A stretch of 64,000 nucleotides of DNA, taken from positions 124,001-188,000 of the IMG/VR virus record IMGVR_UViG_3300036770_004143; one strand, 5' to 3'. Positions within the stretch are counted from its first letter, which is position 1; each line of letters starts with the position of its first letter. Position numbers and translations under genes: made by a program. Positions 20,005-63,546 of the stretch are shown one piece after another. The notes beneath the pieces were generated by a model, which was given only the letters and a program-made list of their open reading frames with translations, was not told the origin of the DNA and searched no databases.

Positions 20005-21054
20005 TTATTTAAATAAACTATCAAATTTTGGATAACCCCAACCATACCAATCATCACGACCAGGCTTACCTCCATCTGTAAGATTTTTTGTTAGATATTC
20101 TTTTAAGTCATTTTGGGTTTTAATTTCTGGGTTATATTTTAGCAATAGACCAACTGCAGCTGTGCCATGTGGTGTTGCCATAGATGTTCCATCCCAACTT
20201 ACATAAGAACCATTATCTTTAAAACAAGACCAAATCTGGACTCCTGGTGCAATACCTACCAAATTACTACCATATTGAGAAAAGGATGCTTTATTACCTC
20301 TAACATCATGAGCACCCCAAGAGATGACATTTGGTAATGCACCTGGGAATGACAATATTCCAGTTCCATTATTACCGGCAGCAGCATTAACAAATGCACC
20401 ATTATTCACAGCATCATTTATTGCACTTGTTATTGTCTTATTTTCAGTGGGTGCACCCCATGAGAAATTAAACACCAATAAATAATCTTTAAAGTTATCT
20501 TTCCATACATTCATTGCATGATTAATTGAATTAACCAAACTTTCTGTGGATCCGCCTCCATTACCACCCAAACCTTTTTGAGCCATAATTAAATCCCCAT
20601 GATTAACACCATTCACATAACCAACGCCTAATTTATATTGGGGGTGCTTACCTAATATAATACCAGCAACGTGATGACCATGTCCATGTCCATCATTTTG
20701 GTTAGAATCAGTTGTAAAGTCTTTGCAATATTTCTTATCCACAAATTGGTTGTCTGACGTTAATGCCGTATGAGTTGGATATGCCATTGTATCAATAACA
20801 CAATAAAGAATCTTACGTTTAAACTTCTCCCCTAATTTTAATTTATTATCAAGAAATTGACTTTGTAAAAAAACCCATCCCCAACTTGGTTGATTATTTA
20901 AGGATGATTCTGTTGATAAAGCCTGTATTTGGGTTGGGGGCAAATCAAGAATAACATCATTACCTTCTTCCAATGCTTTGAAATGTTTTGCAATTAAATC
21001 AAAATTAATTTTCTTTGCAAGAGCAACGTCTTTTGATGAAAAATTTAAATTCAT
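20005..21054 (-). CDS. S8 subtilisin-like serine protease
   Basis: VIDT, HGHHVAG, AAGN, GTSMATP. Confidence 0.92.
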   Translation of the reverse strand: MNLNFSSKDVALAKKINFDLIAKHFKALEEGNDVILDLPPTQIQALSTESSLNNQPSWGWVFLQSQFLDNKLKLGEKFKRKILYCVIDTMAYPTHTALTSDNQFVDKKYCKDFTTDSNQNDGHGHGHHVAGIILGKHPQYKLGVGYVNGVNHGDLIMAQKGLGGNGGGSTESLVNSINHAMNVWKDNFKDYLLVFNFSWGAPTENKTITSAINDAVNNGAFVNAAAGNNGTGILSFPGALPNVISWGAHDVRGNKASFSQYGSNLVGIAPGVQIWSCFKDNGSYVSWDGTSMATPHGTAAVGLLLKYNPEIKTQNDLKEYLTKNLTDGGKPGRDDWYGWGYPKFDSLFK

Positions 21055-33170: not shown

Positions 33171-34229
33171 ATGAGATATGATTTAGATGTTTTGAACAAG
33201 TATGTGGAAGATGGGTTGTTAATGAGAGCAAAACACAAATTATACCCATTGTATATCTATAATTATACTAGAACTGTTCAGTATGGTAATTTGTGGGATG
33301 ATGTTACCATAAATTTTAGAGGAACTATATTGGATGAAGATGGTAATTTAGTTGCTAAAAGTTTCCCAAAATTTAAAAACTTTGAGGAACACTCTGCTGA
33401 TGAATTACCAAATGAAGATTTCAACATCTATGAGAAAATGGATGGATCTTTGGGTATAGTATATTTCTATGACAACAAGTGGAATATGGCAACTAGGGGA
33501 TCTTTTAACTCTGACCAGGCTATAAAAGGTTTGGAAATATTGAATAGATATGACTTATCCTTGTTGGATGTAAATTATACTTACTTATTTGAAATATTAT
33601 ATCCTGAAAATGTTATAGTTGTCCGCTACAATGAAGAGAAATTAGTTTTATTAGCAAAATACAATGTTATAACTGGTGAAGAAGGTGATGTTCAAACTGA
33701 ATATTACAAAGCAAATTTTGATGTTGTTAATTGCTATAATAATTTACCAAATAACTTTGCAGATTTAAAGAGGGGTATAGAGGACAACAAAGAAGGTTAT
33801 GTATTACGCTTCAAAAATGGAATGAGGGTTAAGATAAAGGGTGAACAATATGTTAGACTTCACAAAATATTAACTAATATATCTAATATGGATATATGGT
33901 TATCTTTGAAAAATGGTGAAGATTTATCTTTATTATTGGATGCTATACCAGATGAAATGGACAATAATGTTAGGGATTTTGTTGACTTCTTGAAAATAAA
34001 CTATAATGTTGTATATGATACTGCATTAGATTTTTATGAGAACTTGTTAAATGAAAATGAAATAAATTCCAAAAAAGATTTTGCTTTATTAATAAAGGAT
34101 TTAGACCCAAAAAATAAATCTTTGTTGTTTGCATTTTGGGATAAAAAAAGATATGAGGATATAATATGGAATATAGTAAAACCAGATGAATATTCTTTAT
34201 TGTCTAAATTAGAACTTAATGAATCATAA
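33171..34229 (+). CDS. T4 Rnl1-like RNA ligase
   Basis: EKMDGSLG (motif I), ATRGSF, FE, EGYV, RVKIK. Confidence 0.88.
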   Translation: MRYDLDVLNKYVEDGLLMRAKHKLYPLYIYNYTRTVQYGNLWDDVTINFRGTILDEDGNLVAKSFPKFKNFEEHSADELPNEDFNIYEKMDGSLGIVYFYDNKWNMATRGSFNSDQAIKGLEILNRYDLSLLDVNYTYLFEILYPENVIVVRYNEEKLVLLAKYNVITGEEGDVQTEYYKANFDVVNCYNNLPNNFADLKRGIEDNKEGYVLRFKNGMRVKIKGEQYVRLHKILTNISNMDIWLSLKNGEDLSLLLDAIPDEMDNNVRDFVDFLKINYNVVYDTALDFYENLLNENEINSKKDFALLIKDLDPKNKSLLFAFWDKKRYEDIIWNIVKPDEYSLLSKLELNES

Positions 34230-35920: not shown

Positions 35921-35995
35921 CGCAGGGTCGTATAAGGGTTAGTATATTGGGCTCATAACCCAGAGATATAGGTTCGAGTCCTATCTCTGCAACCA
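35921..35995 (+). tRNA. tRNA-fMet (CAT)
   Basis: C1:A72 mismatch, GGG/CCC anticodon stem, GTTCGAG T-loop, encoded CCA. Confidence 0.9.
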
Positions 35996-36002
35996 GTTAA
36001 AA

Positions 36003-36076
36003 TAGGATGTGGCGCAATCCGGTAGCGCACTTGCTTTGGGAGTAAGTAGTTGCAGGTTCAAATCCTGTCATCCTAA
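36003..36076 (+). tRNA. tRNA-Pro (TGG)
   Basis: TAGGATG/CATCCTA acceptor stem; CTTGC-TTTGGGA-GTAAG anticodon arm. Confidence 0.9.
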
Positions 36077-36095
36077 CAAATGTCCCCTAACCTAA

Positions 36096-41465: not shown

Positions 41466-42620
41466 ATGAATGTATTAAGTTTGTTTGATGGGATGAGTTG
41501 TGGCCAAATTGCTTTAAATAAAGCAAATATTCCATATAATAACTACTATGCTGCTGAAATAGACAAGTATGGTATGCAAATAACAAAGAAAAACTACCCC
41601 AACACAGTTCATTTGGGTGATGTAACTCAAATAAGGGGTAATAATTTGCCAAAAATTGACTTATTGATTGGTGGTAGTCCTTGCCAGGGGTTTTCATTTG
41701 CTGGGAAACAACTTAATTTTGATGATCCAAGGAGTAAATTGTTCTTTGAGTATGTTAGAATACTAAATGAGGTTAGAGAAACTAATCCAAATGTTAAATT
41801 TTTGCTTGAGAATGTGAAAATGAAGAAAGAATTCTCTGATATAATATCAGAACATCTTGGAGTTGAACCTATTAAGATAAATAGTTCATTAGTTTCTGCC
41901 CAAAATAGACTTAGGTTATATTGGACAAATATTGAAGGTGTTGAACAACCAGAAAATAGGAAAATATATCTAAAAGATGTTTTAGAACCTATTGTGGATG
42001 ACAAATATTACATATCACAGATTGCTGTTGAAAAACTAAATAGACATGGTAATAAAGTAATTAAGGAATTGGGCATTCCTAAAAAATCTGGAACAATACA
42101 TGCTGGATATTATAAGATGGGAGGTAGAGATCAGCAGTATGTCAAGGATATTCCAGATTTACAACCATCATTGCAAGATAGGATTTATTCAGATGATGGT
42201 AAATTTGTTGCAATAACCCCCTCCTTTATGCCATATGTTATTACAATTGATAATCATCATTCAGATTCTGAATTAAAATGTGTTGGTGCATTGGGTAAGA
42301 ATAAAAAATGGCTTGATAATGGTAAAAACTTGCAAAGAAACTTTTCACAAGGGGAGAGAATATATTCAACTGATGGTAAATCACCTTGTTTGTCTGCAAA
42401 TAGTGGTGGTAGTGCTGGGGTTGGTAATACATTGATAACAGATGATATAAAAGATGAATACAAAATTAGGAAATTGACACCTATTGAATGTGAAAGGTTG
42501 CAAACAGTTCCAGATAATTATACAGAGGGGGTTTCAAACACTCAAAGGTATAAAATGTTGGGTAATGGATGGACAGTTGATGTTATTACACATATATTTG
42601 AAAAATTAAAAAGTTTATAA
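41466..42620 (+). CDS. C5-cytosine DNA methyltransferase 2 (long variable region)
   Basis: Same motifs as MTase 1; TPIECERLQ. Confidence 0.93.
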   Translation: MNVLSLFDGMSCGQIALNKANIPYNNYYAAEIDKYGMQITKKNYPNTVHLGDVTQIRGNNLPKIDLLIGGSPCQGFSFAGKQLNFDDPRSKLFFEYVRILNEVRETNPNVKFLLENVKMKKEFSDIISEHLGVEPIKINSSLVSAQNRLRLYWTNIEGVEQPENRKIYLKDVLEPIVDDKYYISQIAVEKLNRHGNKVIKELGIPKKSGTIHAGYYKMGGRDQQYVKDIPDLQPSLQDRIYSDDGKFVAITPSFMPYVITIDNHHSDSELKCVGALGKNKKWLDNGKNLQRNFSQGERIYSTDGKSPCLSANSGGSAGVGNTLITDDIKDEYKIRKLTPIECERLQTVPDNYTEGVSNTQRYKMLGNGWTVDVITHIFEKLKSL

Positions 42621-45986: not shown

Positions 45987-46060
45987 GGATCTGTAGCTCA
46001 GTTGGTAGCAGCAAAACGCTCATAACGTTGAGGTCGCAAGTTCAAGTCTTGCCAGATCCA
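45987..46060 (+). tRNA. tRNA-CAT (Ile2/lysidine or elongator Met)
   Basis: GGATCTG/CAGATCC acceptor stem, CTCATAA loop; lacks initiator hallmarks. Confidence 0.85.
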
Positions 46061-46074
46061 CAACATTATTAATT

Positions 46075-46149
46075 TGGCATATAGCTCAAAGGTGGAGCAC
46101 AATTCTGATAAGATTGAGGTTGCTGGTTCAAGTCCAGCTATGCCAACCA
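46075..46149 (+). tRNA. tRNA-Ile (GAT)
   Basis: TGGCATA/TATGCCA acceptor stem, CTGATAA loop, CCA. Confidence 0.9.
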
Positions 46150-58153: not shown

Positions 58154-59401
58154 ATGAGAATATTAATAAATGAAACCCAGTTAAGCAACATAATAAAAGA
58201 AGCAATTCCATATAGTATTGCAAAGGAATACATAACAAGGGAAAGGAGTGATGCTGCTATTAAGTTGATGGATAATGTATTTAATAAATTAAAGAATCTA
58301 CCCAATGCAAAAGTCCTTGATAGGAGGGGAGATAGAATTGCATTTCCTTATGGTGAAACACCTTTGGAAGATGATATAAAAATGTTATTGAAAAAATATG
58401 ATTATAATGTTTTAAATTTTAATAACAATGATGCTTTAAGAATTGCCAAAACTGAAAAAGGAAATAAGGCACAACCAATAAAAATAACCAAAGCATTGGC
58501 AAATATATCAAAATTAAAAGATAAGGATGGGAATGTTATTGAACCAAAGGCAAAAAACTTTGTGGATTTATTTGCTGATGCAAAAAGTAGGGAAGGAAAG
58601 GCAATGGAAAAAAAACTTGGGCTAATTATTATATTTGCAAGACACCCATATGATATTGCTGGAATGTCTTATGGTAGAACTTGGAGGAGTTGTATGCATC
58701 TAGTAGATGGGAAATTTAGAGAGTTTGTTAAGAAAGATATTGAAAATGGTACAATTGCTGTATATCTAACAAATGCAAATGATGAAACATTATCCAACCC
58801 CTTGGCAAGGATTTTGGTTAAACCTTATGTTAATATTAAAAATGACCAGGATGTTATATTATACCCAGAGGCTAAGACATATGGAGAAATTGATAACCCA
58901 AAAAAATTCATAGATTACCTGGATTATGTTTTGGAAAAAGTTCAAAATATGGATGGGGAATATAAGTTATTAAGTTGTTTAAATCCTGATAGCACAAGAA
59001 ATATAGTTACATCAAAAAATTCTGAAACAAGACAAACTATTTTGGCTAAATTAAATAGGGGGACAAAATTAAATAACATTGAAATTAATATGATAACAAA
59101 TTCTGAGAGGGAAGAATATATTGATAAACAAATTTCAAGATATTTTAATTGGAAACCAAACTTGGATGATACTGATTTGGAAGATGTTGCCTTAACAGAA
59201 GATGAATTTAATATTACCACACCTATTGAAAAGGAAGATTATCTTGATGAAAGGATTGAGGATTTTTATAGGACAGTATTTTTACCTAATACAACAAAAA
59301 GAAGGGTTTATGCAATACATGATTTTGAAATAGATCATATGACAAATCAACAATTGCATGATTATTATGAAATAATGCGTGAAAAAGAAAAAAATTATTA
59401 A
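58154..59401 (+). CDS. leader-bearing hypothetical protein (paralog of 55736)
   Basis: MRILINETQLSNIIKE; YDIAGMSYGRTWRSCMHL. Confidence 0.75.
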   Translation: MRILINETQLSNIIKEAIPYSIAKEYITRERSDAAIKLMDNVFNKLKNLPNAKVLDRRGDRIAFPYGETPLEDDIKMLLKKYDYNVLNFNNNDALRIAKTEKGNKAQPIKITKALANISKLKDKDGNVIEPKAKNFVDLFADAKSREGKAMEKKLGLIIIFARHPYDIAGMSYGRTWRSCMHLVDGKFREFVKKDIENGTIAVYLTNANDETLSNPLARILVKPYVNIKNDQDVILYPEAKTYGEIDNPKKFIDYLDYVLEKVQNMDGEYKLLSCLNPDSTRNIVTSKNSETRQTILAKLNRGTKLNNIEINMITNSEREEYIDKQISRYFNWKPNLDDTDLEDVALTEDEFNITTPIEKEDYLDERIEDFYRTVFLPNTTKRRVYAIHDFEIDHMTNQQLHDYYEIMREKEKNY

Positions 59402-59417
59402 TAATTAAAATTATAAT

Positions 59418-60326
59418 ATGAATTTACAAGAGAATATAAATAGAATAAAGCAAATGATGGGCATATTAAATGAACAAGAATTAAATTTTGATATACCAGA
59501 AGATATTAAAAAAGAGGCTGATGATATAACAAAAGTTTTATTTGATAAAGCCAAACAATATTATCTAAATCATTACTCAAAACCTGAAACCACTGCCAAG
59601 TTTGCATATCCAGAGAATGTTGATGGAATAAAAAAATATATACCAACAATTAAATATATATTTTATTCTGCAAATGATGGTAGATTTGGTTTTGTTCCAA
59701 ATATACCAAATGAGCCAATTAATTTGAATATAACTTATTTATTTAAAGAAGAGGGTGGAAAATTAGTTCCAATAAATGAACTCTATAATGTAATTATACA
59801 TGAAATGGCTCATGCTATTGAGTACACATTAAAAGCAAAACAAGAAAAAACAATCACCCCAACATATAATAAAGATAATGTATATGATACTCATACTAAA
59901 TATACTGAAAGTGATAATGAAACATATGCTAGAATTCAAAATTTGCGCAATCTATTAGATTTAACCCCAACCTCTAATGGCACAGACATTAAGAATAAAA
60001 TTATTGAATATTTTAATTCAGGGAAAATAACATTCCCCAATGTTAAATTATATATTGAAGGGCAGAGTAATTACTTAGGATTTACAACAATTGATAAGCG
60101 GAAAATTTTGCCAGATTTAACAAACCTTACATATTTTTTTGGTGATTTAAGAATTAATGGAACAAAGAATGATGACATTGCATTCTTATTTGCAAAATTC
60201 ACATATACCCCATTTGTTGAAGACCCTACCACTACCGTATTCATTGATTTAAATAAACTTGGTGAAGTAAATATTTCTGTTGTGGATGCCACAAAAAAAC
60301 CCAACAACACAACCCAAAGAGCATAA
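59418..60326 (+). CDS. leader-bearing HExxH protein
   Basis: MNLQENINRIKQMMGILNE; IIHEMAH...ETYARIQNLR. Confidence 0.7.
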   Translation: MNLQENINRIKQMMGILNEQELNFDIPEDIKKEADDITKVLFDKAKQYYLNHYSKPETTAKFAYPENVDGIKKYIPTIKYIFYSANDGRFGFVPNIPNEPINLNITYLFKEEGGKLVPINELYNVIIHEMAHAIEYTLKAKQEKTITPTYNKDNVYDTHTKYTESDNETYARIQNLRNLLDLTPTSNGTDIKNKIIEYFNSGKITFPNVKLYIEGQSNYLGFTTIDKRKILPDLTNLTYFFGDLRINGTKNDDIAFLFAKFTYTPFVEDPTTTVFIDLNKLGEVNISVVDATKKPNNTTQRA

Positions 60327-60391
60327 ATCTTTTGTGTATTATAAAACCCCCTATCTACATAATCTGGATGGGGGGGGGTTTTATTTGCCCC

Positions 60392-61129
60392 TTAAACCAT
60401 ATCAACCCTTGCCCCCTTCTTTAAGTTATCCATTGCCCATAGGGGTTGCAAATTGGTATAGTGAGATAAAGCAATTAACTCATCTTCTGATTTTGCAGAG
60501 GATAATGGAATAATATGATCAATATGCCATTCTAAACGATTATCCCAACTCATCCCATTAACAAATTTTGATTCCATATATATCTTAAACTCATTATAAC
60601 TAATCCCAACAATGCTTTCTGTCTTCATTGCAAAATTGGTATAGCCACTCTTTCTAAATGAACCCCTTATTAAAGTGCGTAGTCTCTTCTTTAATGCAAA
60701 TAAGGGGTCGTTTTTAAACTTATTCTTCCACCTCTCATATCTTCTAGCATTATCTTTATTCTTTTGTTCAACCTTATACTCATCTGTCTTCTTATAAGCA
60801 ATCATTCTATTCCTTTCTTCTTTTGCAAGTCTTTTCCTTTCTAACTCCTGGCTCTTCTTTTCCTTCTCAATGTTCAATAATATTAAAGCATCCTCCTTTA
60901 ACTTCTGCTTAATCAATCTATTCTCTAATGCTTTCTTTTTTTCATTCTTTCTCTTATTCTCTCTTATCTTTTCTCTATTAACAGGATTACTTAAATATTT
61001 TTCCATATATGTTTTATTTTTTTCACTTTTGCATTTTTTACATATATAATATAATCCATTCTTTCCTTTTTTATAATAATCTGTTATTGGCAAATCTATA
61101 TTGCAATTCTTACATACTTTTGTTTCCAT
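60392..61129 (-). CDS. HNH-type (homing) endonuclease with N-terminal zinc finger
   Basis: CKNC...CKKC, coiled coil, WHIDHIIP...HYTNLQPLW..DNLKK. Confidence 0.8.
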   Translation of the reverse strand: METKVCKNCNIDLPITDYYKKGKNGLYYICKKCKSEKNKTYMEKYLSNPVNREKIRENKRKNEKKKALENRLIKQKLKEDALILLNIEKEKKSQELERKRLAKEERNRMIAYKKTDEYKVEQKNKDNARRYERWKNKFKNDPLFALKKRLRTLIRGSFRKSGYTNFAMKTESIVGISYNEFKIYMESKFVNGMSWDNRLEWHIDHIIPLSSAKSEDELIALSHYTNLQPLWAMDNLKKGARVDMV

Positions 61130-61159
61130 AATATACTTTTACTTAATAATAATAAAAAC

Positions 61160-62590
61160 CATAGATTATGTAAATTTTTCCCAAAAATTTTATTTGAGAA
61201 ATTGGCAAATAAATTCCTTTACAACCTGTGTGGGGGAAATTGAAGTTTTATGTTGTATGGGGAGGGGGCAAATTTTACCACAAATTTTTTAATTGTCAAA
61301 CAGGCCATTAAAGCCCCTTTTGACCCCCACAAATGCATTATAAGGGGGGACACGGCTGGGGGAGGGGGCCCCACACAGGGGTATAACCCCATCCAGGGGG
61401 GCGTAGGGGTCCCGTTATGGTGGCTGACGTTATGGCAGTCCCCCCTTGTGTTGTAAGTGTTTGATTGTGAGTGTGTTGTGTGGGTTGCTAGTTAAGTGGT
61501 TGGTTTATAATACATTATAACATTAGTAAAACATTAACACCCCCTTAACTAGGATATATAAACCCTTGTAATACAGCCCCTTAACTAATGAGATAACATT
61601 AACTAAACTTTAATTGCCCCCACTGGTCGGGGGATGTGATCATGTGTAAGCCCCTAACATACAATATGTTATACCTGAAGGGACATTATGGTGGGAGGGG
61701 AACATTAACATAATATTAACCCCCTTAACTAGGGGGCTATGCAATAATCTATAATGCACTGATCATCCATTAGTTATGTGGAGGGACCCCCTAATTAAGG
61801 GGGAACAAACTTTAACATACCCCAGGCTAAAAAGTTACTAACACGACAGGATGTCAGTACGCCCCCTTAATTAGGGGGAACTGTCTATGTTATAAGCCAT
61901 TATGTGTGATTTAAATAGGGGGTGTTAATAACTTTTTATTTATCCCCACATAGTTAACCCCTTATAAATCACAACATTATATAGTGTGACATCTTGTCAC
62001 CAGGGGGAGTTTGGCACAGTTTTTGCACATAACAATACCCCTCCGGAGGGGGCAAAAATAGGGGATAATCCCCAAGCAAAACTGCCCCTACATACCCCCC
62101 ATACCATAATTGCCCCTCACATAGTTAAAAAGGGCAATTATGAACTAAAATTGCCCCTCACATACTCAAAAATACTATATACTTTTCCTAGCAAAAAATA
62201 ATGAGTTATGGAACAAGGTGGGGGTAGCGAATGTAATGAGCCTGTAATCCCCCATCACCACCCTTCAATTAGCCCATATATTACATATAATGAACCTTTA
62301 TTGTCAATATGATATGACACATAGGTATGTCATTATCTATTGTTAGAAATCAAATATGCCCCATTACAATCATATAGTAATTTATACAACCCCCTCTGGG
62401 GGTATAAAACAAATTAATACTTATGATATAGTTATAGGGTTTTAGGTGTCTATAATAGGGCAACCATTAAGCCATATGGCTTTTATTATGCCCACACCCA
62501 GACCATAATCAGTAGGGGAAATAAGTTTGAACGCAGCAACCCGCCAAACAGATGCGGTAGCATCGTGTGGGGGTGGGGGGATGTGAGAAA
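61160..62590. other. GC-richer non-coding control region (origin / terminus / injection-control candidate)
   Basis: No credible ORF; G/C runs, more than 10 hairpins, repeated motifs. Confidence 0.7.
62012..62027 (+). promoter_or_regulatory. sigma-54 (-24/-12) consensus site
   Basis: TGGCACAGTTTTTGCA with canonical GG-N10-GC spacing. Confidence 0.6.
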
Positions 62591-62629
62591 ACTTATTTCT
62601 TGATATATTTATGTAATAAAACATATAGT

Positions 62630-63406
62630 ATGAGAAATAGATTAAATGAGCAAGTGAATAGGTTCAAACAAATAATGAATGTCATTAGTGAGAATACAAA
62701 TGATAATGTTGATTTTGTTACATTAACTGGACAAGTGATAGATCAGTTAGAAGGTGGATATTACCATCCAGATATGAGGTATAGATTAAAAGGTGATTGG
62801 TCTAAGTATGGTAATTCTGGTGAAACTATGTTTGGGATTGATAGATTAAGAGGTGGTTCAATCAATACAACTTCTGCTGGTAGGGAGTTCTGGACTTTAA
62901 TTGATAATGCTAATGCAAAGAATACTTGGGATTGGAATTATAAAGGTGGTCAATTGGGTGATAGGTTAAAGGTATTGGCTGCACAAATGATGAAACCACA
63001 GTTTGATTTATATATGAGGAAATATCTTACACCAGAAGCACAGAAGATTGTTAATAGTAGTAAAGCATTGACATTTAATTTCATCTATGCCACTTGGAAT
63101 GGTCCAGGTTGGTTTAAGAAGTTTGCAAATAAGTTTAATGAAGATGTTAAAAAGAATTTAAGTATTGGAGAACTTGTTGGTAAAGTTCTTGAATATAGAA
63201 GAGATAGTGGTAATAGAATTATTGTTGATACTGGAAAGAAGTTAGAGAAGATATTACCAAATATTGAAAACATTAATATTTCTCCCCTATCAACAGGTTC
63301 ATCATCAGATACAGGTATTACATCAAGTGATAATAAACAACCAGGTTTTATTGATATGTTATATGATAAGTTCTTGGCTTCACAAAAGGCATCAAATAAG
63401 GCATAG
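62630..63406 (+). CDS. leader-bearing lysozyme-like (GH108-like) protein
   Basis: ..NVISE leader; VIDQLEGGY...GETMFGID...WNGPG. Confidence 0.6.
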   Translation: MRNRLNEQVNRFKQIMNVISENTNDNVDFVTLTGQVIDQLEGGYYHPDMRYRLKGDWSKYGNSGETMFGIDRLRGGSINTTSAGREFWTLIDNANAKNTWDWNYKGGQLGDRLKVLAAQMMKPQFDLYMRKYLTPEAQKIVNSSKALTFNFIYATWNGPGWFKKFANKFNEDVKKNLSIGELVGKVLEYRRDSGNRIIVDTGKKLEKILPNIENINISPLSTGSSSDTGITSSDNKQPGFIDMLYDKFLASQKASNKA

Positions 63407-63546
63407 AATTGCATTGTGCTTAACTTTATGATATGTTTTGCTATTGGTGCTTGTCTTTTATTATAGTGTGTCTTAAATTGCCTTAAAATAAGAAAACCCC
63501 CATATTGTTATATATGAGGGGTTCTTTGTTTAAATGAAAAAAGCAA

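What the first reader, a model, noticed from the sequence alone, without database searches (positions are those of the whole stretch)
61410..62030. Catalogue of apparent host DNA-binding-protein sites between the hairpins: possible DNA decoy array
Seen: a sigma-54 consensus TGGCAC-N5-TTGCA (62012) with no gene behind it. There are three TGACA-N3-TGTCA-type boxes (61424, 61843, and a perfect one at 61986) and an exact IHF-consensus match TAAGTGTTTGATT (61454). AACATTA/TTAAC direct repeats occur at 61518-61540, 61595-61612 and 61701-61720, and DnaA-box-like TGTTAATAA and TTATCCCCA at about 61923-61948. Known: the sigma-54, IHF and DnaA consensuses are established; assignment of the other boxes is not. 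Inference: so many different sites without a regulated gene suggests a sponge for host stress and replication regulators, or protein handles for DNA entry or replication; alternatively a sigma-54-driven ncRNA at 62040-62560.
Basis: partly seen in the sequence, partly recalled or inferred. Interest (0 to 1): 0.6.

Follow-up and report, generated by a model that had tools for sequence, protein, structure and literature searches.

The report
Conserved phage non-coding control region
The listed "host-factor sites" sit in a 1.5-kb non-coding control region that a family of large freshwater phages of Bacteroidota-type hosts conserves; some sites (a palindromic operator, a DnaA-box pair, a sigma-54-like element) are real and conserved, the IHF match looks like chance, and nothing specifically supports a protein decoy.

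Summary
They lie in a 1.5-kb non-coding region (61130-62632) of a 270-kb uncultivated phage, unique in that genome for G/C runs.

- **Chance level:** in the whole window each consensus occurs about as often as expected. Inside 61410-62030, the exact sigma-54 match and the TGACA-N3-TGTCA boxes exceed local shuffles.
- **Conserved in 13 related metagenomic loci:**
  - TGGCRCA-N-TTTTTG in all 14 sequences, though the -12 "GC" holds in only 7.
  - A TGACA-type palindrome 10-12 or 23 bp upstream of it.
  - The TGTTAATAA/TTATCCCCA pair, a decayed copy of a composite repeat that carries 1-4 perfect DnaA boxes in relatives.
- **Operator:** the same palindrome stands three times between the phage's hsp20 and clpC-like genes.
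- **IHF match:** at chance frequency window-wide, and lost in the two closest relatives.
- **Downstream:** a conserved block and an 87-nt hairpin with strong covariation suggest a rightward non-coding RNA.

Best reading: a cis-acting replication/transcription control region, origin-like. The closest analogue is the T5 injection-stop repeat region. The decoy idea is not excluded, but nothing specifically supports it.

The parts
60392..61129 (-). HNH/endonuclease VII-like gene bordering the non-coding region. It is present or absent between strains, so it is probably a mobile insertion and not part of the control region.
   Evidence: phrog_1035 E=2e-20 and a weak Pfam HNH match. A contig in run X5 joins 60375 to 61153 and skips 777 nt. 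The gene is present in L098, L100, L101 and L106 and absent or replaced in L014 and L015.
61130..62632 (.). The whole 1.5-kb non-coding control region. GC is 37-39% in a 30% GC genome, and G4/C4 runs are about ten times denser than elsewhere in the genome.
   Evidence: 22-26 G4/C4 runs per 500 bp against a genome mean of 2.35. No open frame is conserved in relatives. No Rfam family matches. The same architecture is found in 13 relatives.
61255..61450 (+). Block A: a conserved G-run/C-run-rich block starting with TATAAGGGGGGATACGGCT and ending in a TGACA-type box.
   Evidence: 66-77% identity in relatives. No supported consensus RNA fold. Single copy in the genome.
61425..61437 (.). Degenerate TGACA-type box (TGACGTTATGGCA).
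   Evidence: At the homologous position L104 and L106 carry a perfect TGACACATTGTCA, and L098 and L100 carry TGCCACATTGTCA.
61454..61466 (-). IHF-consensus match, judged to be chance.
   Evidence: 22 matches in the window against 18 expected. The closest relatives L010 and L097 read TTGGT instead of TTGAT. In more distant relatives this position holds a DnaA box, TGTGGATAA.
61517..61726 (+). Three AACATTAAC-type direct repeats (61517-61544, 61593-61620, 61699-61726). They are specific to the window's clade and share the TTAACA core of the TTATTAACA box.
   Evidence: Repeat family D3. 61527-61585 is 90% identical in L105, although the flanking protein is only 52% identical. ATTAACA is enriched in all relatives, 1-8 copies against 0.45 expected.
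61539..61878 (.). CCCCCTTAACTAGG repeat family (61539, 61575, 61719, 61861) with perfect 17-nt palindromes at 61720-61736, 61787-61803 and 61862-61878. These are the 'hairpins', and they differ between lineages.
   Evidence: They lack the T-run that follows the genome's terminator hairpins. Relatives carry other families here, of the CCCGC-N5-GCGGG kind. In strain X4, 61654-61820 and 61903-62003 are replaced by unlike sequence and the 61862 palindrome is partly deleted.
61828..61856 (+). AAAAAGTTACTAACA (a decayed TTATTAACA box) abutting the TGACA-type box CGACAGGATGTCA.
   Evidence: L010 and L097 keep GTTATTAACAC followed by CGACATAGTGTCA or CGTCATACTGTCA at the same place.
61922..61948 (+). 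Composite of a DnaA-like box (TGTTAATAA, the reverse complement of TTATTAACA), a T-rich spacer, and TTATCCCCA (one mismatch from the DnaA box).
   Evidence: Among relatives covering this position, most carry a perfect TTATCCACA there. The composite recurs up to 4 times, mostly inverted, further upstream.
61987..61999 (.). Perfect operator palindrome TGACATCTTGTCA.
   Evidence: Present with up to 2 mismatches in 13 of 13 relatives that reach it, 10-12 or 23 bp upstream of the TGGC element. The exact motif occurs only 4 times in the 270-kb genome; the other 3 are in tandem between hsp20 and clpC.
62012..62027 (+). Sigma-54-type -24/-12-like element TGGCACAGTTTTTGCA.
   Evidence: TGGC[AG]CA-N-TT[TA]TTG occurs once in each of 18 loci, 565-663 nt upstream of the gene. 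The -12 dinucleotide is GC in 7, GA in 6 and GT in 1. The -12 C is deleted in strain X4.
62049..62252 (+). Block B: the most widely conserved non-coding block. It holds GGGGATAATCCCC and two copies of AATTGCCCCTCACATA (62107 and 62148).
   Evidence: 73-84% identity in 13 relatives, with a 16-nt invariant word. No covariation. It has 1-2-nt indels, so it is not coding. Single copy in the genome.
62451..62456 (+). TATAAT hexamer inside an otherwise variable stretch. It is invariant or nearly so across the 14 sequences.
   Evidence: Alignment A5. Its function was not tested.
62514..62600 (+). Hairpin C: an 87-nt extended hairpin with a GGTA apical loop and strong covariation, most likely an RNA structure on the + strand.
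   Evidence: Folding z-scores of -4.9 to -8.2 in 13 sequences. 90.6% of cells are paired against 41-52% when the partners are slid. 12 pairs show changes on both sides. Covariation score is 0.295 against 0.127 in shuffles (0 of 500 reach it). The + strand scores 92.8 bits and the - strand 23.6 bits, and the frequent G-U pairs would be C-A on the other strand.
62605..62612 (+). Phage-type promoter box ATATTTAT, 24 nt before the ATG of the downstream gene.
   Evidence: The TATTTAT core was found at 75 sites upstream of predicted genes, most of them 17-30 nt before the ATG.
62633..63406 (+). Conserved 257-aa gene downstream. Predicted lysozyme-like fold; not part of the element itself.
   Evidence: 662 homologues and no Pfam or PHROG family. 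The AlphaFold model (pLDDT 76.6) aligns over residues 25-216 to VgrG3 peptidoglycan hydrolase, GH24 muramidase, and P22 and T4 lysozymes at Z 7-8.9.

Best explanation
The stretch is the centre of a conserved, cis-acting control region (61130-62632) of a jumbo phage that infects a Bacteroidota-type host.

**What the sequence and comparisons show**
- The left and central half is an ordered array of protein-binding sites:
  - TGACA-N3-TGTCA operators at three conserved positions. The same operator occurs in triplicate between the phage's own hsp20 and clpC-like genes.
  - DnaA-box / DnaA-like-box composites. They are decayed in this phage, but relatives carry 1-4 perfect TTATCCACA.
  - Lineage-specific GC-rich palindromes.
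- At its right edge a -24/-12-type element (62012-62027) lies one or two helical turns downstream of an operator.
- Downstream follow a conserved block (62049-62252) and an 87-nt hairpin with RNA-type covariation on the + strand (62514-62600).

**What I infer**
- Host DnaA and an operator-binding regulator assemble on the array.
- They control a rightward non-coding transcript that starts near 62038 and ends at or after the hairpin.
- Transcription-coupled, DnaA-assisted initiation or control of phage DNA replication (an origin-like locus) is the function I judge most likely.

**Rough odds**

| Claim | Probability |
|---|---|
| Functional, conserved protein-binding region | 0.9 |
| Rightward non-coding RNA | 0.6 |
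| The promoter is truly sigma-54-dependent | 0.35 |
| Origin or replication-control function | 0.35-0.4 |
For: **The region is unique and non-coding.**
- G/C-run density is about ten times the genome mean.
- No conserved ORF and no Rfam family.
- Blocks A, B and C are each single copy in the genome.

**The architecture is conserved.**
- It is found in 13 relatives whose flanking protein is 50-96% identical.

**DnaA boxes are enriched in relatives.**
- Perfect boxes run at 0.03 per kb in this genome and in about 1 Mb of other loci.
- Each relative has 1-4 within the 700 nt upstream of the -24/-12-like element.
- Among about 1 Mb of loci fetched through the downstream gene, clusters occur only in those that carry this region.
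- TTATTAACA and TTATCCACA replace each other at the same position next to an operator, comparing L098/L100 with L104/L106.

**The operator is real.**
- 4 exact copies in 270 kb, all intergenic. I estimate about 0.25 expected from base composition.
- The array is conserved between hsp20 and clpC in relatives with ClpC identity down to 68%.

**The -24/-12-like element is conserved.**
- It is present in all 14 sequences, and its gap to the operator is 10-12 or 23 bp.
- The exact match in 61410-62030 has P=0.0015 against local shuffles.

**Hairpin C covaries and is strand-specific**.

**The host type fits.**
- Canonical TTTG-N19-20-TAnnTTTG promoters precede several genes, and Shine-Dalgarno sequences are not used.
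- A Bacteroides control genome carries the sigma-54 DNA-binding domain.
Against: - **No expression or binding data.** The single read-laying run returned only contigs. An RNA-library contig touches 61281-61384 but shows no transcript.
- **Weak points of the origin reading.**
  - The region lies at a local maximum of cumulative GC skew, where two large gene blocks converge. It is not at a minimum.
  - There is no stretch of 85% A+T or more inside it that could serve as an unwinding element.
  - This phage has no perfect or relaxed-consensus DnaA box in the region.
- **Weak points of the sigma-54 reading.**
  - The -12 C is kept in only 7 of 14 sequences and is deleted in a strain about 98% identical.
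  - The phage encodes no enhancer-binding activator. Its only PF00158 hit is a ClpC-type chaperone.
  - The palindrome is too close to the element to be a classical upstream activating site.
- **The centre evolves fast.** It is replaced between strains that are 97-99% identical in the flanks.
- **Block B shows no covariation**.
Confidence: 0.4

Rival explanations
1. It is a transcription-control and non-coding-RNA locus with no role in replication. The operators and DnaA boxes only tune a promoter, either the -24/-12-like element or another one. Its product is a roughly 560-nt regulatory RNA, or a long leader for the lysozyme-like gene, ending in hairpin C.
For: - The promoter-like element, block B and the covarying + strand hairpin are all conserved.
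- The same operator controls the hsp20-clpC intergenic region, a clearly transcriptional context.
- DnaA acts as a transcription factor in other systems (established knowledge, for example at the lambda pR promoter).
- GC skew gives no hint of an origin here.
Against: - The downstream gene already has the phage's standard promoter box 24 nt before its ATG.
- Block B conservation is at the sequence level and shows no covariation.
- An array of up to four inverted DnaA-box composites plus many palindromes is more than a single promoter normally needs.
Confidence: 0.25
2. It is a DNA-entry checkpoint like the T5 injection stop signal. The DnaA and DnaA-like boxes and palindromes would arrest or pace genome injection at the border between an early-gene arm and the rest of the genome, for example by binding membrane-associated DnaA.
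For: **Shared with T5 Repeat Region 3** (bioRxiv 10.1101/866236):
- A 1.2-kb untranslated region.
- Consensus DnaA boxes plus the same variant boxes, TTATTAACA and TTATCCCCA.
- An HNH gene inserted in some members.
- Non-coding parts conserved better than neighbouring ORFs.

**In this phage:**
- The region borders the long minus-strand arm (genome 187-270 kb), which holds many small genes and the host-type promoters.
- L015 has composites about 51 nt apart, against a 52-bp spacer in T5.
Against: - No terminal repeat or physical end is known. The record is classed 'linear' with no end repeats, and the region is internal in three assemblies.
- Contig ends within the region are scattered over 61065-61990, not at one point.
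- The T5 model itself is an untested proposal.
- T5 box pairs are 3 bp apart, whereas here they are 6-8 bp apart and inverted.
- A1/A2-type genes were not looked for.
Confidence: 0.12
3. The array would be a decoy that titrates host DNA-binding proteins (DnaA, sigma-54 holoenzyme, a stress regulator) away from host targets as the phage genome multiplies, much as the E. coli datA locus titrates DnaA.
For: - In relatives, clusters of high-affinity DnaA boxes lie in a non-coding region and not directly in front of a gene.
- The operator is shared with chaperone genes, so a stress-type regulator is conceivable.
- The region's copy number would rise with replication (inference).
Against: - This phage has lost every perfect DnaA box.
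- The IHF match is at chance frequency window-wide and is lost in the two closest relatives.
- Order, orientation and helical spacing of the sites are conserved relative to a promoter-like element and a downstream RNA structure. A simple sponge does not need that.
- The operator cannot be assigned to a host protein. The known Bacteroidetes SOS operators are GGA-N5-TCC and CTAA-N5-TTAG (PMC8565304).
Confidence: 0.07
4. There is no specific function. The region would be a hypervariable junction that collects mobile GC-rich palindromes and a homing HNH gene, and the motif matches would be coincidences.
For: - The centre is replaced between near-identical strains, and assemblies often break here.
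- The HNH gene is present or absent between strains.
- The palindrome families are lineage-specific.
- At window level the motif counts equal chance.
Against: - The -24/-12-like element, the operators, the DnaA composite, and blocks A, B and C are conserved by position across lineages whose flanking protein has diverged to 50-70% identity.
- Hairpin C covaries.
- DnaA boxes are enriched far above background.
Confidence: 0.05

Closest known systems
Phage T5 untranslated Repeat Region 3 / injection stop signal (iss) in the left terminal repeat (Davison, bioRxiv 10.1101/866236)
   Same: - A non-coding region of 1.2-1.5 kb in a large lytic phage.
- A dense, ordered set of direct repeats, inverted repeats and palindromes.
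- Consensus DnaA boxes plus the same variant boxes, TTATTAACA and TTATCCCCA.
- An HNH endonuclease gene inserted in some members.
- Non-coding blocks conserved better than neighbouring ORFs.
   Different: - No terminal repeat or two-step transfer is known here.
- The phage lineage and host phylum are unrelated to T5.
- Box pairs are inverted and 6-8 bp apart, not 3 bp apart.
- This phage itself has no perfect box.
- This region adds a -24/-12-like element, a TGACA-N3-TGTCA operator and an RNA-type hairpin.
DnaA-dependent origins (bacterial oriC; plasmid and phage origins with DnaA boxes such as P1 oriR). Named from established knowledge.
   Same: - A cluster of TTATCCACA boxes in both orientations in relatives.
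- Additional repeated elements that resemble iterons.
- A non-coding location.
   Different: - No AT-rich unwinding element was found.
- It lies at a GC-skew maximum, not a minimum.
- No initiator gene is adjacent.
- The boxes have decayed in this phage.
Sigma-54 (RpoN) -24/-12 promoters
   Same: - An exact TGGCAC-N5-TTGCA in the window.
- The GG, the spacing and TTG are conserved in all relatives.
   Different: - The -12 C is variable.
- No enhancer-binding protein gene is present in the phage.
- The nearest palindrome is only 10-23 bp upstream, not about 100 bp.
- No transcript start has been shown.
E. coli datA-type DnaA-titrating locus. Named from established knowledge.
   Same: A non-coding cluster of DnaA boxes with no directly regulated gene, seen in the relatives.
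   Different: The sites are embedded in a fixed architecture with a promoter-like element and a structured RNA. Titration has not been tested, and this phage lacks perfect boxes.
Transcription-activated phage origins (T4 oriF/oriG, T7 primary origin, the ColE1 RNA II principle). Named from established knowledge.
   Same: A promoter-like element followed by a conserved, untranslated, structured transcript region inside a protein-binding array.
   Different: There is no evidence for an R-loop or a primer, and no sequence similarity to these origins.

Membership tests
Sigma-54-dependent promoter | GG at -24 and GC at -12 with fixed spacing (TGGCAC-N5-TTGCW) | tested here: met
   Exact match at 62012-62027. 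P=0.0015 in local shuffles.
Sigma-54-dependent promoter | The -24 GG and -12 GC are kept under selection in relatives | tested here: inconclusive
   GG, the spacing and TTG are invariant in 14 of 14 sequences. The -12 dinucleotide is GC in 7, GA in 6 and GT in 1, and the C is deleted in strain X4.
Sigma-54-dependent promoter | A cognate AAA+ enhancer-binding activator and an upstream activating site | tested here: not met
   The only PF00158 hit in the phage is a ClpC-type chaperone. There is no Sigma54_DBD. A host activator cannot be tested because the host is unknown.
Sigma-54-dependent promoter | A transcript start about 12 nt downstream of the -12 element that depends on RpoN | not testable with these tools
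   Only assembled contigs were available.
DnaA-box cluster / DnaA-dependent origin | Several 9-mers matching TTATCCACA or TTWTNCACA | tested here: not met
   The window has 0 perfect and 0 relaxed-consensus boxes in the 700 nt upstream of 62012, only TTATCCCCA and TTATTAACA. Relatives do meet the feature, with 1-4 perfect boxes against 0.02 expected.
DnaA-box cluster / DnaA-dependent origin | An adjacent AT-rich unwinding element and a strand-skew switch of origin polarity | tested here: not met
   No 40-nt stretch with 85% A+T or more lies between 61180 and 62590. The region is at a local maximum of cumulative GC skew.
DnaA-box cluster / DnaA-dependent origin | DnaA binding and replication initiation at the site | not testable with these tools
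   This needs EMSA or ChIP and marker-frequency analysis.
IHF binding site | A match to WATCAANNNNTTR that exceeds chance and is conserved | tested here: not met
   The match exists (61454-61466), but the window has 22 against 18 expected. It is lost in L010 and L097.
T5-type injection-stop repeat region | A large untranslated region with a conserved order of repeats and palindromes and paired DnaA/DnaA* boxes | tested here: met
   compared. The pairing geometry differs from T5.
T5-type injection-stop repeat region | A location at the inner end of a long terminal repeat / first-step-transfer DNA, with A1/A2-type genes | not testable with these tools
   The record has no end repeats and the region is internal. 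Raw-read coverage could not be examined, and A1/A2 homologues were not searched.
Known structured RNA family (Rfam) | A score above a family's gathering threshold | tested here: not met
   No hit in 61100-62660. The best E-value is 0.1, far below any gathering score.
Intrinsic terminator (for the C5-loop-G5 palindromes) | A GC-rich hairpin followed by a T-run | tested here: not met
   Genome-wide, hairpins of this type at gene ends are followed by TTTT+. Those at 61617, 61720, 61787, 61862, 62038 and 62390 are not.

The most novel reading that the evidence does not exclude
The region would be a multi-factor host-capture hub found in a family of Bacteroidota jumbo phages. It would recruit or sequester host DnaA, sigma-54 holoenzyme and a chaperone-gene regulator on one 1.5-kb non-coding module. 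Its role would be to pace genome entry or to switch the cell from host to phage replication. That would make it a functional counterpart of the T5 injection stop signal that arose independently in an unrelated phage lineage, with a dedicated non-coding RNA as its output.
Probability: 0.12. Interest if true: 0.8.

Novelty: new variant of a known kind. Interest (0 to 1): 0.5.

Why it matters
- **Model for cis-acting control.** Large uncultivated phages of Bacteroidota have almost no characterised cis-acting elements. Most large proteins tested in this window match no phage protein family. A conserved 1.5-kb non-coding module could therefore serve as a model. It offers testable protein sites (DnaA-type boxes, an operator shared with phage chaperone genes, a conserved sigma-54-like element) and a covarying RNA hairpin. 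With these, one could study how such phages start replication or time gene expression.
- **Parallel with T5.** The repeat region of T5 has had an unresolved function for decades. A second, unrelated example with the same box types would make comparison possible.
- **Rarity.** To my knowledge a phage promoter that depends on sigma-54 would be unusual, and two literature searches here found no described case.

Tried and rejected
- **Published phage genomes.** No DNA similarity to 50,697 phage records.
- **IMG/VR relatives.** The two hits were 100% identical and so uninformative. More distant homologues of the downstream gene (54% identity or less, L018-L095) share no DNA with the region and have no DnaA-box cluster.
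- **Rfam.** Nothing at gathering or E-value thresholds.
- **Small-protein hypothesis.** All frames hit relatives only because the DNA is conserved, and most hits contain stops or frame-breaking indels.
- **RNA structure in blocks A and B.** No covariation.
- **Phage-encoded sigma-54 activator.** Rejected, because the PF00158 hit is a ClpC-type chaperone.
- **Phage-encoded sigma-54 or DnaA.** None found.
- **TGACA-N3-TGTCA as the Bacteroidetes SOS operator.** Rejected, because the published motifs differ. A literature search for the motif with heat shock found nothing relevant.
- **Block B word AATTGCCCCTCACATA in viral contigs.** The other hits are unrelated coding DNA.
- **Composite DnaA repeat in 185,579 bacterial genomes.** One hit, in Clostridium arbusti beside a second DnaA box, so no host clue.
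- **Physical genome end.** Not supported. Three assemblies read through the region, and contig ends are scattered.
- **Canonical Bacteroidota promoter for the 62012 element.** Its two TTTG motifs are only 8 nt apart, not the 19-20 nt seen in this phage's canonical promoters.
- **Reads.** The single read-laying run returned only assembled contigs, so neither expression nor coverage steps could be judged.
Full report
**Setting**

The window is bases 124001-188000 of a 270,075-bp IMG/VR virus record. The record is 30% GC, estimated 90% complete, and has no end repeats. Near-identical DNA occurs in subsurface, freshwater, wastewater and aquaculture metagenomes from 14 studies.

The host is not known, but the genome carries two hallmarks of Bacteroidota.
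- Shine-Dalgarno sequences are not used: 23 of 269 starts have one against a 6% background. The region from -15 to -3 is A-rich.
- Several genes at genome 203-253 kb are preceded by the canonical TTTG-N19-20-TAnnTTTG promoter.

A second, phage-specific box is far more common. Its TATTTAT core was found at 75 sites upstream of predicted genes, most of them 17-30 nt before the ATG.

The finding lies in a 1.5-kb non-coding stretch, 61130-62632.
- On its left is a minus-strand HNH/endonuclease VII-like gene, 60392-61129.
- On its right is a plus-strand 257-aa gene, 62633-63406. Its model has a lysozyme-like fold, Z 7-8.9 against VgrG3 hydrolase, GH24, and P22 and T4 lysozymes.
- The stretch has 22-26 G4/C4 runs per 500 bp against a genome mean of 2.35, which is unique in the genome.

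**Check of the observation**

All strings are at the stated places.

Over the whole window each consensus occurs about as often as in shuffles:
- IHF: 22 against 18.0.
- DnaA with up to 1 mismatch: 35 against 32.5.
- TGACA-N3-TGTCA with up to 2 mismatches: 33 against 37.9.
- Sigma-54 with up to 1 mismatch: 1 against 1.28.

Against 2000 dinucleotide shuffles of 61410-62030 itself:
- The exact sigma-54 match has P=0.0015.
- The exact palindrome occurs in 0 of 2000 shuffles.
- Three TGACA-type boxes have P=0.0025.
- IHF has P=0.04, and DnaA with up to 1 mismatch has P=0.30.

These local values are post hoc, so I relied on conservation instead. The words most enriched in the stretch belong to the CCCCCTTAACTAGG palindrome family, not to any host-factor consensus.

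**Relatives**

- Published phage genomes have nothing similar, and the two IMG/VR hits are identical copies.
- Homologues of the downstream protein at 50-96% identity led to 13 distinct metagenomic loci that keep the non-coding region.
- Conserved parts are block A (61255-61450), a short element at 61917-61948, block B (62049-62252), and block C plus the promoter (62514-62632).
- The centre, 61450-61900, is not alignable outside the window's own clade.
- A strain 97-99% identical in the flanks has 61654-61820 and 61903-62003 replaced by unlike sequence.
- Another strain lacks the HNH gene, joining 60375 to 61153.
- Many contigs end inside 61065-61990, but at scattered points, and several assemblies read through. 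These are therefore assembly breaks, not genome ends.

**What the listed sites are**

*(1) The sigma-54-like element.*
- TGGC[AG]CA-N-TT[TA]TTG is found once in every locus, 565-663 nt before the gene.
- GG, the spacing and TTG never vary. The -12 dinucleotide is GC in 7, GA in 6 and GT in 1, and the C is deleted in strain X4.
- The phage has no sigma-54 gene and no enhancer-binding activator. The PF00158 hit is a ClpC-type chaperone.

*(2) The TGACA-N3-TGTCA boxes.*
- The perfect one at 61987 is kept, with up to 2 mismatches, in all 13 relatives that reach it.
- It lies 10-12 or 23 bp upstream of the TGGC element, a difference of one helical turn.
- The boxes at 61425 and 61844 are also conserved by position. 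L104 and L106 have a perfect TGACACATTGTCA at the first, and L010 and L097 have near-perfect boxes at the second.
- The exact motif occurs only four times in the genome. The other three are in tandem, 31 nt apart, between divergent hsp20 and clpC-like genes at genome 116.66 kb.
- That array is conserved in phages whose ClpC is only 68-88% identical.
- The motif is therefore a genuine operator of this phage group. Whether its binder is a phage or a host protein is open. It is not the published Bacteroidetes SOS operator.

*(3) The DnaA-like pair at 61922-61948.*
- It is the decayed copy of a composite, TGTTAATAA plus a T-rich spacer plus TTATCCACA.
- In most relatives that cover this position, the composite carries a perfect DnaA box there. 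It recurs, mostly inverted, up to four times further upstream.
- Perfect boxes run at 0.03 per kb in this genome and in about 1 Mb of other fetched loci. Relatives have 1-4 within 700 nt, and clusters occur only in loci that carry this region.
- TTATTAACA and TTATCCACA replace each other at the same place next to an operator. TTATTAACA therefore behaves as a variant DnaA box.
- The window's own clade has largely replaced the array with AACATTAAC-type repeats that share the TTAACA core.

*(4) The IHF match.* It is not conserved even in the closest relatives. It overlies what is a DnaA box in others.

*(5) The 'hairpins'.* These are lineage-specific families of short GC-rich palindromes. They lack the T-run that marks this genome's terminators.

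**Downstream of the finding**

- Block B is the most widely conserved part. It has a 16-nt invariant word present twice, but it shows no covariation and has frame-breaking indels.
- Block C is different. All relatives fold into the same 85-90-nt hairpin, with z-scores of -4.9 to -8.2.
- On a structure-aware alignment of block C:
  - 90.6% of cells pair, against 41-52% when the partners are slid.
  - 12 pairs carry changes on both sides.
  - The covariation score is 0.295, against 0.127 in shuffles (0 of 500 reach it).
- The plus strand scores 92.8 bits and the minus strand 23.6 bits. Frequent G-U pairs would be C-A on the other strand.
- This points to an RNA read rightward. The hairpin lies upstream of the downstream gene's own promoter box (62605), so it must be transcribed from inside the non-coding region.

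**Mechanism**

*Shown:* an ordered, conserved array of operator sites and DnaA-type boxes, then a conserved -24/-12-like element, a conserved block, and an RNA-type hairpin.

*Inferred:* DnaA and an operator-binding regulator assemble on the array and control a rightward non-coding transcript.

I rate an origin-like, transcription-coupled role in replication as the single most likely function, at about 0.35-0.4. Three points weigh against it:
- The region sits where two large gene blocks converge, at a local GC-skew maximum.
- It has no AT-rich unwinding element.
- This phage has lost its perfect DnaA boxes.

The rivals are:
- A purely transcriptional or ncRNA locus (0.25).
- A T5-like DNA-entry checkpoint (0.12).
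- The decoy (0.07).
- No function (0.05).

**Comparison with known systems**

The closest described thing is the untranslated Repeat Region 3 of T5-like phages, which contains the injection stop signal. Shared features:
- A 1.2-kb non-coding region.
- A conserved order of repeats and palindromes.
- Consensus DnaA boxes plus the same variant boxes, TTATTAACA and TTATCCCCA.
- An HNH insertion in some members.

The defining context of that system is a terminal repeat and two-step transfer. It could not be tested here, so I claim resemblance, not membership.

The element matches the sigma-54 consensus, but it fails or leaves open the other defining features of such promoters. It is not a member of any Rfam family.

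**Verdict**

- The decoy interpretation is not supported.
- It is a new variant of a known kind, a phage cis-acting control region, and is moderately interesting.

Noticed in passing
genome 116664-116738 (outside the window, about 7.3 kb before its start; L176:173-247): Three TGACA-N3-TGTCA palindromes, 31 nt apart, lie between a divergent small heat-shock protein gene (Hsp20-type, 143 aa) and a 670-aa ClpC/ClpB-type AAA+ chaperone gene. The array is conserved in related phages (L187-L189).
   Followed up: yes
window 60375-61153: The HNH/endonuclease VII-like gene is absent in a variant in run X5, which skips 777 nt and has 29 other letters in between. Relatives have different left neighbours. 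This looks like a free-standing homing endonuclease insertion.
   Followed up: partly
whole genome, e.g. window 62605-62612; genome 203-253 kb: There are two promoter classes. Canonical Bacteroidota TTTG-N19-20-TAnnTTTG promoters precede several genes of the long minus-strand arm. A phage-specific ATATTTATA box (75 sites with the TATTTAT core) mostly lies 17-30 nt before the ATG, which implies very short leaders and possibly a phage-directed polymerase specificity.
   Followed up: partly
window 62633-63406: The 257-aa protein has 662 metagenomic homologues but no Pfam or PHROG family. Its predicted fold over residues 25-216 is lysozyme-like (VgrG3 hydrolase, GH24, P22 and T4 lysozymes, chitosanases; Z 7-8.9), with an invariant LEGGYYH ... 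SGETMFGIDR motif.
   Followed up: partly
window 61340-61445: Block A has six G-runs of 4-6 on the plus strand within about 100 nt of a 30% GC genome, so a G-quadruplex is possible. The G-run and C-run blocks are rearranged between relatives without a consistent hairpin.
   Followed up: partly
window 62451-62456: A TATAAT hexamer is invariant or nearly so in all 14 relatives, inside an otherwise poorly conserved stretch between block B and hairpin C.
   Followed up: no
window 60347-60378 and 63497-63521; many sites genome-wide: Intrinsic terminators in this phage have a stereotyped form: C4-5, a loop, G4-5, then a T-run. Several share the loop core AACC-N-TAATTA/GATT.
   Followed up: no
window 35921-36077 and 45987-46149: Four tRNA genes lie in two pairs (Met-CAT + Pro-TGG; Met-CAT + Ile-GAT).
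   Followed up: no
window 7822-38116 (several ORFs of 350-640 aa): Seven of the ten large proteins tested have no PHROG family at E<=1e-5. The three exceptions are a DNA methyltransferase (41466-42620), a protease-like protein (20005-21054) and an RNA ligase-like protein (33171-34229). The phage is very distant from characterised ones.
   Followed up: no
window 59396-59477: Contigs from two studies diverge here, with loose ends at the start of gene 59418-60326. This is a second mosaic junction, about 1.7 kb left of the non-coding region.
   Followed up: no
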